Of a stretch of DNA of 64,000 nucleotides, positions 33,235 to 47,800 are shown in pieces. The notes under the pieces were generated by a model. That model did no database searches and had not been told where the DNA came from. It saw only the letters and a program-made list of their open reading frames with translations. The DNA is from Macrostomum lignano. Its lineage: Eukaryota. A program made the position numbers and the translations under genes. The stretch is taken from NCBI GenBank assembly GCA_002269645.1, contig NIVC01000106.1, forward strand, positions 248,001 through 312,000. The letters are read 5' to 3'. Numbering within the stretch: the first letter of the stretch is position 1; every line of letters starts with the position of its first letter.

Positions 33235-34065
33235 CTTGGATTGACCAATCTGTATATTGGATTGACCAATCTATAAGTTGGATTGAACAATCTGTATATT
33301 AGACTGACCAATCTGTATATTGGATTGACCAATCTGTAAAATAGATTAACCACAATCTGTACATTAGATTAACCACAATCTGTACAGTAGATTAACCACA
33401 ATCTGTACATTAGATTAACCACAATCTGTACATTAGATTAACCACAATCTGTACATTAGATTAACCACAATCTGTACAGTAGATTAACCTCAATCTGTAC
33501 ATTAGATTAACCACAGTCTGTACATTAGATTAACCACAATCTGTACATTAGATTAACCACAATCTGTACATTAGATTAACCACAATCTGTACATTAGATT
33601 AACCACAATCTGTACAGTAGATTAACCACAATCTGTACATTAGATTAACCACAATCTGTACAGTAGATTAACCTCAATCTGTACATTAGATTAACCACAA
33701 TCTGTACAGTAGATTAACCACAATCTGTACATTAGATTAACCACAATCTGTACAGTAGATTAACCTCAATCTGTACATTAGATTAACCACAATCTGTACA
33801 GTAGATTAACCACAATCTGTACAGTAGATTAACCACAATCTGTACAGTAGATTAACCACAATCTGTACAGTAGATTAACCACAATCTGTACAGTAGATTA
33901 ACCACAATCTGTACAGTAGATTAACCACAATCTGTACAGTAGATTAACCACAATCTGTACAGTAGATTAACCACAATCTGTACAGTAGATTAACCACAAT
34001 CTGTACAGTAGATTAACCACAATCTGTACATTAGATTAACCAATCTATACATTGGATTGAACAAT
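33235..34065. repeat. 21/23-bp minisatellite (TGTACATTAGATTAACCACAATC) just 3' of KLHDC9
   Basis: Tandem units visible. Confidence 0.95.
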
Positions 34066-34092: not shown

Positions 34093-36314
34093 CTAGCCCT
34101 CTGGCGTCCATTCCAGCCGGCACAGTCGCCCAGTAACCTGGCAGTCTGACAGGACGCCGCCCTGCAGCCAGGCCACACCGGTGGCCGGACACACGCAGGC
34201 CACGGCACCAGCGACAGCCGCGTCCTGACTGGCCTGGCCGCAGTCGAATGCGGCGACACCGTCCAGCAGGACGAAGTGCGATGTCGGGCCCTTGTGGCGT
34301 CCGGTGAAAGTCTCGCCGCCGTACAGCAGAATCCGGCGACCGCCTGCGGCGAATGCCGAGTGGCCGCGACGGCCATTGCGACGGGGATCGCTTGGCCGGC
34401 ACGGGATCGACTTTGAGTCCAGAACTGCCGCTGCGAATGAGGCTGCCGCGTGGCAGATTGGACCTGCGGAGGATGGGAGTGCTCAAAACTGAGATAATTG
34501 CTCACAGTTGGGCTAAAAAGTGCTCAAAACTGAGATAATTGCTCACAGTTGGGCTAAAAAGTGCTCAAAACTGAGATAATTGCTCAGAGTTCGCAACAAG
34601 TGCTCAAAACTAAGATAATTGCTCAGAGTTCGGCAACAAGTGCTCAAAACTGAGATAATTACTCAGAGTTGGGAAACAAGTGCTCAAAACTGAGATAATT
34701 GCTCAGAGCTGGGCCAAGAAGTGCTCAAAACTGAGATAATTGCTCAGAGTTGGGCCAAGAAGTGCTCAAACTGAAATAATTGCTCAGAGCCAAAAAGTGC
34801 TCAAAACTGGGATACTGTAATTGCTCAGAGCTGGGCCAAGAAATGCTCAAAACTGAGATAATAAAAAACCACCCCCAGTCTCACTAGGCTTCACTCCGCG
34901 GAAGGCATGCACCTCGGTGAGCTGGTCGGCCCGACCGCCCGTCACCACCAGCCGGCCGCCGCTGGAGTCGCCGACCGTGGCGTGGCCGCTGCGAGAGCCC
35001 ACCACAATGCCCGGCTCAGCGTACTCGGACGTGGCTGGCCGGCTGGCCCGGCCGGACAGCAGGAAGGCGTTGCCAGATCGGCGCTGAGTTCGCAGCGAGC
35101 CCTCGCGACCGATCAACAGGGCGGCGAAGTTGTCGCTTCCGGTTCTGACATCGCCTCCGCCGACGCCTGAAGGAAAATTTCATAAAAATTGAGTTGAGTT
35201 GACCTGCAGCCAAGCGAGAAGGCGAGCAGTCATGGGTGGATGCTGTAGAAAAAGGAAAAGAAACGACTCTAAAACGGAAGTTTCACAAGCTCGAAGTGTG
35301 ATAAGCTCGAAGTGTGATAAGCTCGAAGTGTGATAAGCTCGAAGTGTGATAAGCTCGAAGTGTGATAAGTTCGAAGTGTGATAAGTTCGAAGTGTCACAA
35401 GCTCGAAGTATCACAACAAGCTCGAAGTGTCACAAGCTCGAAGTGTCACAAGCTCGAAGAGTGATAAGCTCGAAGTGTCACAAGTTCGAAGTGTCACAAG
35501 CTCGAAGTGTCACAAGCTCGAAGTGTCACAAGCTCGAAGAGTGATAAGCTCGAAGTGTCACAAGTTCGAAGTGTCACAAGTTCGAAGTGTCACAACAAGC
35601 TCGAAGTGTCACAAGCTCGAAGTGTCACAACAAGCTCGAAGTGTGATAAGCTCGAAGTGTCACAAGCTCGAAGTGTCACAAGTTCGAAGTGTCACAAGCT
35701 CGAAGATTTACTAACTCAAACTCGTTCTAGTTTCAAAAGTGACTGGCAGATCTGTTCGAAAATGGTGAACTATTTTTAAGGTAAATTTCTAAAAAACCCA
35801 CAGATAAACAAAGCGATGTACTTTTTCTCCGTCCTCCAGCATTAGCAGCTGTCGCAACAGCGGTCGCCGTATGACCGCTCAAGCCGGCTCCACGAGGAAA
35901 ATTGCCGGGCTGCAGGCCGACACAGATCCAACGGCACTCGGCTGTATCATAGCAGGACAAACCGCTTGTCCGCTGACGGCCGTCCCAACCGCCTAGCAAC
36001 AGGAGGTAGCGGTTAGCAACTGTCAGGGAGGCGTGCCCGCTAAGCGCTGGAGACTCCGGCGTGGTCAGGTCGGTCCAGACTCCGCTGTCCAGCTGGCACC
36101 TGTGCAGCTGGTTGACTGGCGACTGGCCGCGGTACTGGCTGACCCCGCCGTGGGTGTACAGGCAGCCCCCGATCACCTGGCCCGTGTGCTCGGCGACCCG
36201 GGGCCCTCCGGCGCTACCGATGGAGCGCCAGGTCAGGTGCAGCTGCACTGGCTGGGAATCCAGGCTGGAGCGCCGGGCTGCGGCCTGCCTTGCCGGTCTG
36301 GGTGGTGATGAGGA
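34093..36314 (-). CDS. KLHDC9: Kelch domain-containing protein 9 homolog, 381 codons with no Met; exons 36314-35822, 35166-34885, 34463-34093; start codon not in these exons
   Basis: LLGGWDGRQR, AGLSGHTAT, IGREGSLRTQRRSG, SRSGHA and LYGGETF match the KLHDC9 motifs GGWDGSRR, AGLSSHTCT, GREGGIHTQRRYG, SRSGHC and FGGETL. Both introns are phase 1 and in frame to TAG 34095-34093. Confidence 0.85.
34480..34860. repeat. ~41-bp minisatellite filling KLHDC9 intron 2
   Basis: GTGCTCAAAACTGAGATAATTGCTCA.AGTTGG... about 9 units. Confidence 0.93.
35285..35705. repeat. 16-bp minisatellite (AGCTCGAAGTGT[G/C]A[T/C]A) in KLHDC9 intron 1
   Basis: Tandem units visible. Confidence 0.95.
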
Positions 36315-36339
36315 CTGGAGAGGAATGGGATGCGCTGGA

Positions 36340-36721
36340 TGCGTATGTCTGTCTGTCTGCCTGTCTGTCTGTATGTCTGTCTGCCTTCCTGTCTGTCTGC
36401 TTGTCTCTCTGTCTGCTTGTCTCTCTGTCTGTCTTTCTGTTTGTCGGTCTGTCTGTCTTCCTGTCTGTCTGTCTGTCTTCCTGTCTGCCTGTCTGTCTGT
36501 CTGCCTGTCTGTCTGTCTGCCTGTCTGTCTGCCTGTCTGTCTGTCTGTCTGTCTGGCTGTCTGTCTGTCTGCCTTCCTGTCTGTCTGCTTGTCTCTCTGT
36601 CTGCTTGTCTCTCTGTCTGTCTTTCTGTTTGTCGGTCTGTCTGTCTTCCTGTCTGTCTTTCTGTCTTCCTGTCTGCCTGTCTGTCTGTCTGCCTGTCTGT
36701 CTGTCTGCCTGTCTGTCTGCC

Positions 36722-36754
<33 letters not shown>

Positions 36755-36905
36755 GCCTGTCTGTCTGTCTGTCTGCCTTCCTGTCTGTCTGCTTGTCTCT
36801 CTGTCTGTCTTTCTGTTTGTCGGTCTGTCTGTCTTCCTGTCTGTCTGTCTTCCTGTCTGCCTGTCTGTCTGTCTGCCTGTCTGTCTGTCTGCCTGTCTGT
36901 CTGCC

Positions 36906-36938
<33 letters not shown>

Positions 36939-37250
36939 GCCTTCCTGTCTGTCTGCTTGTCTCTCTGTCTGTCTTTCTGTTTGTCTTCCTGTCTGTCTTC
37001 CTGTCTGTCTGTCTGTCTTCCTGTCTGTCTCTCTGTCTGTCTTCCTGTTTGTCTGTCTGTCTGTCAGTCTGTCTGTCTGTCTGTCTGCCTTCCTGTCTGT
37101 CTGCCTGTCTGTCTGCCTGCCTGTCTGCCGGTCTGTCTTCCTGTTTGTCCGTCCGTCTGTCTGTCTGCCTGTCTGTCTTCCTGTTTATCTGTCTGTCTTC
37201 CTGTTTGTCTGTCCGTCTGCCTGTCTTTTCCGCCCGTCTGTCCGCTTTCG
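36340..37250. repeat. (CTGT)n-rich microsatellite immediately upstream of the first KLHDC9 acceptor
   Basis: Direct reading. Confidence 0.97.
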
Positions 37251-37629
37251 TGTTTATCTAATACGCAGTCGGCTCAAGACGGCAGAAATAGCACAGATTA
37301 GAACTCATGTAGATCGCATATGTATTGGCAGTTATACGAGTATCATACAGACTGTAGTTGAAACCAACGTAAGCTGCATGCCATACATGTACAATATATT
37401 CAACAATTCAATCCAGCATTAATATATCTTAACAAAATCAAGATGGATAGGCAAGAAATAGATCAACAAATAAATAAATTGAATTAGAGTGCAATTCTAG
37501 TACTGTACAATGCATAACCTTGAGTCGCAACCACAATCTAGTTTTTCCAACGCTAAGATCTGCCACTGACGCAGACAATGATACTTGAAATACAATAGGT
37601 GTCGGCAAAATTTTGTTCCCCAACGGCTC

Positions 37630-37745
37630 GATCGAGAACCTAACGCATGACTGGGGTCCAGAGTAGGGAAGGAGGGGAGAGAGGAGAGAGGAGAGAAGAG
37701 AGGAGAGAAGAGGAGATGAGAGTGGAGAAAACGACAGAGATTACT
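37630..37745 (-). mobile_element. Short relic of the microsatellite-cored element, copy E
   Basis: Reverse complement reads CT-rich core followed by CAGTCATGCGTTAGGTTCTCGATC. Confidence 0.45.
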
Positions 37746-37895
37746 AGAGATAAGTGAGTTTGCCGACCGCCTGAAGTACAATACTAACTATAAATAACCC
37801 GGCTTTACTTTGTGCAGTTAAATCCGGGCTCGTCAAATATAACCTAGTCATAAACAAAACAGACTACTAGTAATAGTAGTATCGTCAACTAATTG

Positions 37896-43374
<5,479 letters not shown>

Positions 43375-43574
43375 TTAGTATGGAAGCTAGCTTAAGCTGG
43401 AGAGTGGGTTAAAGAAATACTTTATAATACAGTTGCTTTTGTTTTATGCTACTTAACTGTTGAATAAAGAGTAGTCAAGTACGATTATTGGATTTTAATA
43501 GGAATTCAGAAGCTTAAAAAAGTTCAACTGTTTTATGAAGTGCTGGAAGTGACCTTCGTGGATTTTCAGTGAGC

Positions 43575-45548: not shown

Positions 45549-46188
45549 TTAAAGAAACTCAATGGTATCAGCCTCAAACGAGACCACATTATTTGGCACA
45601 GACCAAGGCTTGCTGTTGTCACTGACCTCGGCAGCAACTGGTGTGTCCTCAGCATCCTTGCTGCCGGCCTTGTCTTCATCACACGATGAAGATGGCGCGT
45701 GAAACTGAATCAAAGCGTCGACATATGATCGGCGAGGCTGCTGAACTTGTTTCACCGGTGGAACAGGTGTCATCACCGGCTCTACCGGTGAAGCCTGGCT
45801 AGTGTCGCCTTCTTTGTCGTCAGTGCCGGACACAACCGCGTTCATGATGTCATCTAAATCGTCCAGAGTGGCAGTTGGACCGCTGTTGGCGTCGTTGCTA
45901 ACAATATTATTGTTAGTGTTCAGCGTTTTAAAGTCTGCCAACGGGTCCTGCGGGCAGATAGTGATGAATGCGTTTGATGAGCCTGCAGTGGGTCTGAGAA
46001 AAGACAGTGCCTAAATGTCTGTCTGCCCCTGTCTGTCTGTCTGTCTTAGTGTCTGTCTGCCTGTCAGTCTGTCTGCCTGTTGTCTGTCTGTCTGTATGTG
46101 TGTCTGTCTGTCTGTCTGTCTGTCTGCGTGTCTATCTGTCTTTCTGTCTGCGTGTCTGTCTGTCTGTCTGTCTGTCTTTCTGTCTGCG

Positions 46189-46225
<37 letters not shown>

Positions 46226-47800
46226 GCGTGTCTGTCTGTCTGTCTGTCTGTCTGCGTGTCTGTCTGTCTGTCTGTCTGTCTGTCCGGGCGTGTGTGTCTA
46301 CCTGCTCAAGCTCGGCATCCTCAGCATCAGCCTCATCGGCCGCCCCCCGCCCTCTGGTCCGCAGGCGCTCCAGGCACTCCCGGACAGCTGGCAGGAAGGC
46401 TTCGAATTCGGCTTCGACCAGAGCCAGCTCAACATCGGCAGCCGTCATCGTTTTGCGACCCTGCGGAGCCGCCGCCTTCTTGCTGTTCAACGGCTGCTTG
46501 CGAAAGACGCGACCTCGAGTAGATCGGTGCTGCCTGGTGTTGCGGGCGAAATTGAGATCGGTGATCATTGAGGTTGGGGTTGAACTGATGACAGTTAGGC
46601 CTACGTCCTCTCCTGTTCTTCTTTCCCACTCTCACTCTCTATCTCGCTATAAAATCTCTCACACTCTACCAGTCAAGCATTATATCCTACCTCACTCCTC
46701 TATATGTTTCTTCCCCACTCTTTATGTAGCTCTCCTCATACATTACTGTCTGGTTCCTCTCTAATTGCCTCTCACTCTCTACCTGTCTCTCCCTCACTCT
46801 CTTCCTGTCTCTCCCTCACTCTCTTCCTGTCTCTCCCTCACTCTCTTCCTGTCTCTCCCTCACTCTCTTCCTGTCTCTCCCTCACTCTCTTCCTGTCTCT
46901 CCCTCACTCTCTTCCTGTCTCTCCCTCACTCTCTTCCTGTCTCTCCCTCACTCTCTTCCTGTCTCTCCCTCACTCTCTTCCTGTCTCTCCCTCACTCTCT
47001 ACCTGTCTCTCCCTCACTCTCTACCTGTCTCTCCCTCACTCTCTATCTGTCTCTCCCTCACTCTCTACCTGTCTCTCCCTCACTCTCTACCTGTCTCCCT
47101 CACTCTCTACCTGTCTCTCCCTCACTCTCTACCTGTCTCTCCCTCACTCTCTACCTGTCTCTCCCTCACTCTCTACCTGTCTCTCCCTCACTCTCTACCT
47201 GTCTCCCTCACTCTCTACCTGTGTCTCCCTCACTCTCTTCTCTCCCTCACTCTCTACCTGTCTCCCTCACTCTCTACCTGTCTCTCCCTCACTCTCTTCT
47301 CTCCCTCACTCTCTACCTGTCTCTCCCTCACTCTCTACCTGTCTCCCTCACTCTCTACCTGTCTCTCCCTCACTCTCTACCTGTCTCTCCCTCACTCTCT
47401 ACCTGTCTCTCCCTCACTCTCTACCTGTCTCTCCCTCACTCTCTACCTGTCTCCCTCACTCTCTACCTGTGTCTCCCTCACTCTCTTCTCTCCCTCACTC
47501 TCTACCTGTCTCCCTCACTCTCTACCTGTCTCTCCCTCACTCTCTTCTCTCCCTCACTCTCTACCTGTCTCTCCCTCACTCTCACCTGGCAGCCTCGGCC
47601 AGCATGACATCATTAGCGGCCGCAGTCAATCGCAGAGCGAACGCAATCGCACAATCACCAATCAATTTCCTAGCGTCCTTAGCAACGGAAGCCGAGTCGG
47701 GTAGCGAAGATTTGATCAGACGATTGAGCACAGTTTGAGGCAGACCCAGCTGCTCAAACGTTGGACCAGTTTCTTCAGACTGAAACACAGACACCATCAT
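45549..47800 (-). CDS. POLE3: DNA polymerase epsilon subunit 3 / CHRAC17 histone-fold protein with extended acidic tail; exons 47800 (or acceptor 47779)-47586, 46482-46302, 45947-45549
   Basis: [27 protein letters not shown] and [31 protein letters not shown] match the POLE3 histone fold ([58 protein letters not shown]). Phases 2 and 0 consistent; the exon 2 acceptor is one of two possible sites. Confidence 0.88.
46015..46290. repeat. (CTGT)n microsatellite, POLE3 intron 2
   Basis: Direct reading. Confidence 0.96.
46765..47580. repeat. 22-bp CT-rich minisatellite (CTGTCTCTCCCTCACTCTCT[T/A]C), POLE3 intron 1
   Basis: Direct reading. Confidence 0.95.

What the first reader, a model, noticed from the sequence alone, without database searches (positions are those of the whole stretch)
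34093..36316. KLHDC9 frame has no Met in 381 codons and opens at a phase-0 acceptor: candidate for initiation from a spliced-leader AUG
Seen: the three exons form a complete, conserved kelch protein with no ATG in frame. The first exon begins after a good acceptor (TCCCATTCCTCTCCAG|TCC TCA TCA) in phase 0, a few residues before the point where the human protein starts to align, and only a (CAGA)n tract lies directly upstream. Established: flatworm spliced leaders end in a conserved AUG, which has been shown in Schistosoma to act as an initiator. Inference: the gene cannot be translated without trans-splicing, which would give M-S-S-S-P-P-R. Caveat: a weak mini-exon such as ATG ATA CTC|GTATAA near 37340 cannot be excluded.
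Basis: partly seen in the sequence, partly recalled or inferred. Interest (0 to 1): 0.78.

Follow-up and report, generated by a model that had tools for sequence, protein, structure and literature searches.

The report
Flatworm gene started by spliced-leader AUG
A conserved kelch-repeat gene (KLHDC9-like) of the flatworm Macrostomum lignano has no start codon of its own and almost certainly borrows the AUG at the end of the trans-spliced leader, a mechanism already documented in flatworms, so this is a clean example and not a new phenomenon.

Summary
On the minus strand, three exons (36314-35822, 35166-34885, 34463-34093) give a 381-codon kelch propeller ORF with no Met. Exon 1 starts in phase 0 after the acceptor tcccattcctctccag|TCC. 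Upstream lie 31 unique bases and then an 881-nt (CAGA)n tract.

The window is identical to M. lignano Mlig_3_7 contig NIVC01000106.1. NCBI annotates this gene and its duplicate copy as 5'-partial proteins. The duplicate's model (PAA79864.1, 381 aa) begins at the first base after the same acceptor.

The two copies differ by 10 synonymous and 3 non-synonymous changes (pN/pS 0.11), and neither has gained an ATG. The published 35-nt M. lignano leader ends in ATG, and the acceptor fits the published trans-splice motif [T/C]TNCAG. It is the best of 252 AGs in the region. A co-directional NPRL3 gene ends 1.58 kb upstream (about 0.64 kb after subtracting repeats), which is operon-like.

No read-level evidence could be reached, so trans-splicing at this exact site is inferred. 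Initiation from the leader AUG is established in flatworms: more than 40 Schistosoma cDNAs need it, and Macrostomum authors already call it a start codon. This is a new member of a known kind and of modest interest.

The parts
36315..37895 (-). Outron / intercistronic region between the NPRL3 stop codon and the KLHDC9-like acceptor (1581 nt; about 643 nt after subtracting tandem repeats)
   Evidence: It holds 10 ATGs and 13 phase-0 ATG...|GT candidates, none with the M. lignano GT[A/G]AG donor.
36346..37226 (-). (CAGA)n microsatellite inside the outron, open in all frames and without ATG
   Evidence: TRF and translation. The duplicate locus L002 has a 1.2-kb (AGAC)n tract at the same place.
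36315..36334 (-). Pyrimidine tract plus acceptor cgcatcccattcctctccag|, the proposed SL trans-splice site (exon begins at 36314)
   Evidence: Ranks first of 252 AGs for pyrimidine content (0.82) and is one of 4 matching [T/C]TNCAG. It is identical in the duplicate locus.
35822..36314 (-). Exon 1 (493 nt, begins in phase 0 with TCC TCA TCA = S-S-S); donor GAAAAA|gtacat
   Evidence: The model matches NCBI PAA90622.1 and PAA79864.1.
35167..35821 (-). Intron 1, containing a 16-nt tandem repeat (35277-35705)
34885..35166 (-). Exon 2 (282 nt)
34464..34884 (-). Intron 2, containing a 41/81-nt tandem repeat (34478-34862)
34093..34463 (-). Exon 3 coding part, ending in stop TAG at 34095-34093
37896..43374 (-). 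Upstream co-directional gene NPRL3 (GATOR complex; ATG at 43374, stop at 37898-37896), the likely upstream cistron
   Evidence: Gene table with PF03666; exon mapping of UniRef NPRL3 models; ORF map

Best explanation
The KLHDC9-like gene is the downstream member of a co-directional NPRL3 -> KLHDC9 pair in Macrostomum lignano. Its pre-mRNA carries an outron made of about 640 nt of unique sequence plus an 881-nt (CAGA)n tract. The outron is removed by spliced-leader trans-splicing at ctctccag|TCC (window 36315|36314). The 35-nt leader CGGTCTCTTACTGCGAAGACTCAATTTATTGCATG is joined so that its terminal AUG sits in frame directly before codon 1. The result is a 382-aa protein beginning M-S-S-S-P-P-R-P, with a roughly 25-residue disordered N-terminal tail followed by a kelch beta-propeller. 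That AUG is the first AUG of the mature mRNA and the only one in frame.

Shown here: the ORF anatomy, the acceptor quality, purifying selection, and the annotated 5' end at the acceptor in the duplicate copy. Inferred: that SL is joined at this site in this copy, and that ribosomes initiate on the SL AUG.
For: 1. **ORF:** 381 codons with no Met; all six ATGs of the CDS are out of frame.
2. **Published annotation:** The window is identical to NIVC01000106.1. NCBI models of both copies are 5'-partial. The duplicate's 381-aa model (PAA79864.1) starts at the first base after the acceptor. In that annotation, 5' ends of trans-spliced genes were set by peaks of SL-containing reads (TBONE, PMC5730564).
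3. **Acceptor:** Best of 252 AGs and fits [T/C]TNCAG (motif from PMC8629364).
4. **Selection:** The copies differ at 13 CDS sites, 10 synonymous and 3 not; pN/pS is 0.11 and the binomial P is 2.8e-4. All splice sites are conserved and neither copy has gained an ATG.
5. **N-terminus:** Orthologs start 10-17 residues before the conserved W-R that sits at residues 29-30 here. In the AlphaFold model (pTM 0.81) the first strand falls at residues 26-31 and the residues before it are low confidence, so no N-terminal domain is missing.
6. **Context:** Same-strand NPRL3 lies 1581 nt upstream, about 643 nt after repeat subtraction. That is under the published 1-kb operon threshold.
7. **Literature:** The M. 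lignano SL ends in ATG. Thirty percent of all genes and 45% of human-conserved genes are trans-spliced (PMC8629364). Macrostomum authors call the SL ATG a translation start codon (PMC10468722). More than 40 S. mansoni cDNAs need the SL AUG (Cheng 2006, as cited in PMC9851317). In E. granulosus, 143 of 187 SL clusters are full length only when the SL ATG is counted (PMC3510090).
Against: - No SL-junction read or cDNA was seen, because none of the available collections held M. lignano transcripts of this gene.
- The window's own copy is annotated from 27 nt further in (PAA90622.1 starts QAAARR at 36287), not from the acceptor. The exact-boundary evidence therefore comes from the duplicate.
- The SL AUG context here (TGC AUG U) lacks a -3 purine and a +4 G.
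- The gene's own intron 1 uses a weak-looking donor (gtacat), so weak upstream donors cannot be dismissed on sequence alone.
- The two copies are about 99% identical around the candidate mini-exon, so conservation cannot discriminate.
Confidence: 0.8

Rival explanations
1. A genomic 5' exon carrying an ATG is cis-spliced onto the acceptor at 36314. The exon could lie in the 1.58-kb upstream interval, such as the reader's ATGATACTC|gtataa at 37346-37338, or it could be an NPRL3 exon giving a read-through fusion. The gene would then be conventionally initiated.
For: Thirteen phase-0 ATG...|GT candidates exist in the interval. Three of them, including the mini-exon, are preserved exactly in the duplicate locus. 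The gene's own intron 1 donor is non-consensus (gtacat), so weak donors are used in this gene.
Against: None of the 13 has the GT[A/G]AG donor typical of M. lignano. Neither RNA-seq-based NCBI model has an upstream exon, and the duplicate's model starts exactly at the acceptor. Three further gene models from the older assembly also lack a Met start. Preservation in the duplicate means little, because the copies are about 99% identical there.
Confidence: 0.08
2. Trans-splicing occurs, but translation starts at a near-cognate codon (in-frame CUG at codon 18, 25 or 27, or GUG at 23). Alternatively, SL is joined at one of the other in-frame AGs (36284 giving M-AAARR..., or 36251 giving M-PVQLH...), which would give a shorter N-terminus.
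For: The SL AUG context is weak and in-frame CUG/GUG codons lie upstream of the first beta strand. Two further phase-0 AGs exist within the first 63 nt. The window copy's annotated protein begins 9 codons in.
Against: The alternative AGs have poorer pyrimidine tracts and do not fit the motif. With an in-frame AUG as the first AUG 32 nt from the cap, non-AUG initiation is unnecessary, and SL-AUG use has experimental precedent.
Confidence: 0.06
3. The locus is not translated: it is a transcribed relic or pseudogene that lost its start codon.
For: There is no in-frame ATG anywhere, and the gene is flagged partial in the databases.
Against: A 381-codon ORF is intact in both duplicates, with pN/pS 0.11 (P = 2.8e-4) and all splice sites kept. 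Ninety-three invariant columns are shared with annelid orthologs, and a confident propeller model was obtained.
Confidence: 0.03

Closest known systems
Flatworm mRNAs that take their initiator Met from the 3'-terminal AUG of the spliced leader (Cheng, Cohen, Ndegwa and Davis 2006, J Biol Chem 281:733; Schistosoma. Also reported for Echinococcus granulosus, PMC3510090)
   Same: The leader ends in AUG. The acceptor is in phase 0 at the very start of a conserved ORF. No genomic AUG can supply the conserved N-terminus.
   Different: This is a free-living basal flatworm (Macrostomorpha), not a parasite. The ORF here contains no Met codon at all, so there is not even a downstream fallback AUG. Trans-splicing and initiation are inferred here, not shown experimentally.
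[quoted passage not shown]
   Same: The acceptor fits the [T/C]TNCAG motif. There is a same-strand upstream gene, a repeat-filled intergenic spacer with a repeat-adjusted distance under 1 kb, and a conserved gene with a human homolog.
   Different: Those papers do not analyse which genes depend on the SL AUG. Whether NPRL3 and this gene share one primary transcript was not verifiable here.
slORFs in nematodes, ascidians and euglenozoans (slORFfinder, PMC9851317)
   Same: A start codon donated in trans by the leader creates the ORF.
   Different: There the leaders mostly offer near-cognate NUG codons and the ORFs are often alternative. Here a canonical AUG opens the main conserved ORF.

Membership tests
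SL-AUG-initiated flatworm mRNAs | The species' spliced leader ends in AUG immediately before the SL donor site | tested here: met
   From the literature: the 35-nt M. lignano SL is ...ATTGCATG, followed by GTAAG in the 109-nt SL RNA gene (PMC8629364). The SL gene is not in this window.
SL-AUG-initiated flatworm mRNAs | The mRNA is SL trans-spliced at the acceptor that opens the ORF | tested here: inconclusive
   Only indirect evidence. The duplicate's RNA-seq-based gene model starts at the first base after the acceptor. The site is the best acceptor and fits the motif. No junction read could be retrieved, and the window copy is annotated from +27.
SL-AUG-initiated flatworm mRNAs | The SL AUG is in frame with the main ORF, with no intervening stop | tested here: met
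   The acceptor is in phase 0. ATG plus the CDS gives a 382-aa product.
SL-AUG-initiated flatworm mRNAs | No genomic AUG can give the phylogenetically conserved N-terminus | tested here: met
   There are zero in-frame ATGs in 381 codons, or in the roughly 300 open codons upstream. The conserved region starts at W29, and orthologs start 10-17 residues before it.
SL-AUG-initiated flatworm mRNAs | Translation demonstrably starts at the SL AUG | not testable with these tools
   Needs ribosome profiling, N-terminal proteomics or a reporter.
M. lignano operon (criteria of Ustyantsev and Berezikov 2021) | Adjacent same-strand genes with a repeat-adjusted intergenic distance under 1 kb | tested here: met
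   The NPRL3 stop is at 37896 and the acceptor at 36315, a gap of 1581 nt. Subtracting 938 nt of tandem repeats leaves about 643 nt, measured from the stop codon and not from the poly(A) site.
M. lignano operon (criteria of Ustyantsev and Berezikov 2021) | The downstream gene is SL trans-spliced and both genes lie on one transcriptional unit | tested here: inconclusive
   The locus tags Mlig016903g2 and Mlig018640g3 fit a second or third gene of a transcriptional unit (naming scheme). The NPRL3 locus tag could not be retrieved.
KLHDC9 (kelch domain-containing protein 9) orthologs | Kelch beta-propeller covering nearly the whole protein, about 320-380 aa, with no BTB/BACK domain | tested here: met
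   Pfam PF24681, PF13415 and PF01344 match. PDB kelch propellers match. The AlphaFold model is all-beta with pTM 0.81.
KLHDC9 (kelch domain-containing protein 9) orthologs | Closest named relatives are KLHDC9 (ideally a reciprocal best hit to human KLHDC9) | tested here: inconclusive
   The best non-Macrostomum cluster (E 4.5e-46, 38% identity) contains KAI0214795.1, named 'Kelch domain-containing protein 9'. There are 93 invariant columns, including GREGSLRxQRRxGNAF. The reciprocal search against human was not done.

The most novel reading that the evidence does not exclude
The gene depends wholly on the leader AUG, since the conserved protein has no Met codon. In addition, the choice among the clustered acceptors in the first 63 nt would act as an on/off switch for protein output. 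Sites 36314, 36284 and 36251 are in frame. Sites 36297, 36288 and 36264 are out of frame and give 17-28-codon dead-end ORFs. The different annotated 5' ends of the two duplicates would reflect that choice.
Probability: 0.12. Interest if true: 0.45.

Novelty: new member of a known kind. Interest (0 to 1): 0.25.

Why it matters
The practical value is in annotation. Both NCBI entries (PAA90622.1, PAA79864.1) and three UniProt fragments are labelled partial, or are truncated, because pipelines trim the leader together with its ATG. The protein is in fact complete once the SL AUG is counted, and the same fix probably applies to many '5'-partial' M. lignano genes.

The gene has no alternative in-frame AUG, and M. 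lignano is the one flatworm with stable transgenesis. This outron plus exon 1 would therefore make a clean natural reporter for testing SL-AUG initiation in vivo in a free-living flatworm. It does not reveal a new mechanism.

Tried and rejected
- **Exact look-up of M+381 aa:** I looked up the M-prefixed protein for both copies, and the bare 381-aa window protein, in the 15-billion protein collection. I hoped for an ORF called on an SL-bearing transcript contig, but none is present.
- **Transcript-derived hits:** The homology search returned no Logan or transcript-derived M. lignano hits and no other Macrostomum species. Neither the junction test nor the ortholog test could be done.
- **Supplements and full text:** I searched Grudniewska 2018, Wudarski 2017 and Ustyantsev 2021, and all held full text, for Mlig016903, Mlig018640 and KLHDC9. 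Nothing was found.
- **NPRL3 locus tag:** Two protein searches aimed to recover the NCBI tag of NPRL3 and so prove shared transcriptional-unit membership. The first returned only UniRef fragments, probably swamped by poly-Ala words. The second returned nothing, although part of the query is in a known UniRef model.
- **Cheng et al. 2006:** The paper is not held. Its results are quoted second-hand from PMC9851317 and PMC3510090.
- **SL sequence in the window:** Absent.
- **Conservation between duplicates:** I tried it as a test of the mini-exon and rejected it as uninformative, because the copies are about 99% identical there.
- **P0003 (UniRef A0A1I8JP10):** I considered it as a third copy with a different N-terminus and rejected it. 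It reads exons 1 and 2 out of frame, consistent with indel errors in the older assembly.

Full report
**What is in the sequence**

Read on the minus strand, the interval holds three exons: 36314-35822, 35166-34885 and 34463-34093. They join into an 1146-nt ORF of 381 sense codons followed by TAG.

The translation contains no methionine. The six ATG triplets in the spliced CDS are all in frames +1 or +2, and the first lies 364 nt in.

Exon 1 follows cgcatcccattcctctccag| and begins TCC TCA TCA in phase 0. The same frame stays open for about 300 more codons upstream, because the (CAGA)n tract has no stops in any frame. That stretch has no ATG either. TRF places the microsatellite at 36346-37226, 31 nt from the acceptor.

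**Origin and existing annotation**

The window is base-for-base identical to Macrostomum lignano assembly Mlig_3_7, contig NIVC01000106.1.

| Copy | NCBI protein | Locus tag | Length | Annotated start |
|---|---|---|---|---|
| Window | PAA90622.1 | BOX15_Mlig016903g2 | 372 aa, 'partial' | QAAARR, 27 nt inside exon 1 |
| Duplicate (NIVC01000612.1, locus L002) | PAA79864.1 | BOX15_Mlig018640g3 | 381 aa, 'partial' | SSSPPRP |

The duplicate's gene model begins at the first base after the identical ctctccag acceptor.

Wudarski et al. 2017 (PMC5730564) describe how this annotation was made. Reads containing the leader were trimmed and mapped, and the TBONE pipeline cut transcriptional units at the resulting peaks to set the 5' ends of mature mRNAs. 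A transcript end that coincides to the base with a consensus acceptor, with no upstream exon in the model, is what that procedure yields for a trans-spliced gene.

This is the strongest evidence available here, but it is indirect and it comes from the duplicate. Three UniProt models from the older assembly also lack a Met start.

**Is the gene real and complete?**

- **Family:** Pfam finds kelch families (PF24681 at 4e-17, also PF13415 and PF01344), and PDB kelch propellers match.
- **Orthology:** The closest relatives outside Macrostomum are annelid proteins of 322-364 aa at 37-42% identity. One is named 'Kelch domain-containing protein 9' by its source. The alignment has 93 invariant columns.
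- **N-terminus:** Conservation begins at W29-R30 of the flatworm ORF. Orthologs have their Met 10-17 residues before that point, so the flatworm N-terminus is expected about where exon 1 begins.
- **Structure:** An AlphaFold model (pTM 0.81) puts the first beta strand at residues 26-31 of the 381-aa numbering. The residues before it are of low confidence, so no structured N-terminal element is missing.
- **Selection:** The two genomic copies differ at 13 coding positions, 10 synonymous and 3 not (pN/pS 0.11). The chance of 3 or fewer non-synonymous changes under neutrality is 2.8e-4. All five splice sites are conserved.

Both copies are therefore under purifying selection while lacking any in-frame ATG, which argues against a pseudogene.

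**The acceptor**

There are 252 AG dinucleotides between the NPRL3 stop codon and 115 nt into exon 1. The 36314 site has the highest upstream pyrimidine content (0.82). It is one of only four that fit the motif [T/C]TNCAG, which Ustyantsev and Berezikov found enriched at M. lignano trans-splice acceptors (PMC8629364).

The same paper gives the 35-nt leader CGGTCTCTTACTGCGAAGACTCAATTTATTGCATG. Joined at 36314 it reads ...TTGC AUG UCC UCA UCA, giving a 382-aa product MSSSPPRP....

**Context**

A same-strand gene for the GATOR subunit NPRL3 (PF03666) runs from ATG 43374 to its stop at 37898-37896. The 1581-nt spacer shrinks to about 643 nt after removing tandem repeats. That is below the 1-kb repeat-adjusted threshold the same authors use to call operons, and they note that repeats inflate spacers within operons.

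In the duplicate locus the spacer is 7.7 kb. An antisense non-LTR retrotransposon, a 56-nt repeat expansion and a longer (AGAC)n tract were inserted there, yet the gene still starts at the same acceptor. The suffixes g2 and g3 in the locus tags fit downstream positions in transcriptional units. I could not retrieve the NPRL3 tag to prove this.

**Rival explanations**

- **Cis-spliced ATG exon:** This cannot be excluded from sequence. Thirteen phase-0 ATG...|GT candidates exist, and the gene's own first donor (gtacat) is weak. However, none has the GT[A/G]AG donor typical of the species, no annotated model contains such an exon, and conservation between the roughly 99%-identical copies says nothing.
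- **Near-cognate initiation:** In-frame CUG at codons 18, 25 and 27, and GUG at 23, could be used. This is unnecessary when the first AUG of the mRNA is in frame.
- **Other AGs in the first 63 nt:** Sites 36284 and 36251 would also be in frame. Sites 36297, 36288 and 36264 would give 17-28-codon dead ends.
- **The window copy's annotated start:** A start at 36287 is compatible with a transcript beginning at 36288, just after an AG. One of three possible offsets landing after an AG has roughly a 1-in-5 chance, so I treat this as unexplained and not as evidence.

**Comparison with what is known**

A 3'-terminal AUG is a hallmark of flatworm leaders (PMC12582326).

- Cheng et al. 2006 showed it can serve as the initiator. 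[quoted passage not shown]
- In E. granulosus, 143 of 187 SL-bearing clusters are full length only with the SL ATG, and its use is conserved among orthologs (PMC3510090).
- For Macrostomum, Wiberg et al. [quoted passage not shown] They deliberately left it on trimmed reads (PMC10468722).
- In M. lignano, 30% of all genes and 45% of human-conserved genes are trans-spliced.

The present gene is thus a textbook-clean member of a known class. Its only unusual trait is the complete absence of Met codons. That is improbable by chance (about 5e-4 at 2% Met, 2e-2 at 1%). It is softened by the gene's 68% GC content and by a GC-rich ortholog with a single internal Met.

**Verdict**

The finding is a new member of a known kind and of modest interest. 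Its value lies mainly in correcting '5'-partial' annotations and as a potential reporter for SL-AUG initiation in a transgenic-capable flatworm.

Noticed in passing
window 43374-43404 (minus strand): The upstream NPRL3 gene has a look-alike acceptor (cccactctccag|CTTAAG, exon start 43396) 22 nt before its genomic ATG at 43374. If SL were joined there, the SL AUG would be out of frame and would open a 100-codon ORF overlapping the NPRL3 start. That would be the opposite situation to the KLHDC9-like gene.
   Followed up: partly
L002 2526-7264 (minus strand of the locus), duplicate contig NIVC01000612.1: The duplicate's NPRL3-KLHDC9 spacer carries an antisense non-LTR retrotransposon. ORFs of 307, 190, 641 and 307 aa look like the gag-like, endonuclease, reverse-transcriptase and RNase H parts. 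There is also a 7-copy expansion of a 56-nt unit that is single-copy in the window. Together these stretch the spacer from 1.6 to 7.7 kb without changing the acceptor.
   Followed up: partly
window 36287-36289: The window copy's NCBI protein starts at Q10 (36287), not at the acceptor. A transcript beginning at 36288 would lie just after an AG (gcaag|g), and an SL AUG there would be out of frame with a 25-codon ORF. It is unclear whether this reflects an alternative trans-splice site, multi-mapping between the duplicates, or an incomplete transcript.
   Followed up: partly
window 33287-34042, 34478-34862, 35277-35705: Both introns and the 3' flank of the gene are largely filled by tandem repeats: 23-nt x33 in the flank, 41/81-nt x9.5 in intron 2, and 16-nt x26 in intron 1. 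Repeat copy number differs between the two genomic copies.
   Followed up: no
window 40859-41923 and 46014-46297 (minus strand): The same (CAGA)n/(GACA)n microsatellite, which reads as TDRQ repeats in translation, recurs in NPRL3 introns and upstream of NPRL3 on the same strand. The strong GC/AT-skew blocks elsewhere in the window (for example 2-6 kb, 10-12 kb, 28-30 kb, 46-48 kb, 54-56 kb) probably reflect similar tracts.
   Followed up: no
window 35822-35880 / 35120-35166 (exon 1-exon 2 junction): Relative to annelid orthologs, the flatworm protein has an extra segment of about 22 residues (…TAANAGGRRK|SVGGGDVRTGSDNF…) spanning the exon 1/exon 2 junction. The structure model gives it low confidence (pLDDT below 50). 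It is present in the RNA-seq-based NCBI models, so it is probably a real disordered loop and not a mis-called splice site.
   Followed up: partly
window 45552-46010 (minus strand): A 153-codon open frame ends about 2.2 kb upstream of NPRL3 on the same strand. One UniProt NPRL3 model (A0A1I8FL59) begins with residues from it ([12 protein letters not shown]). It may be the last exon of a further co-directional gene, which would fit the duplicate's KLHDC9 being 'g3'.
   Followed up: no
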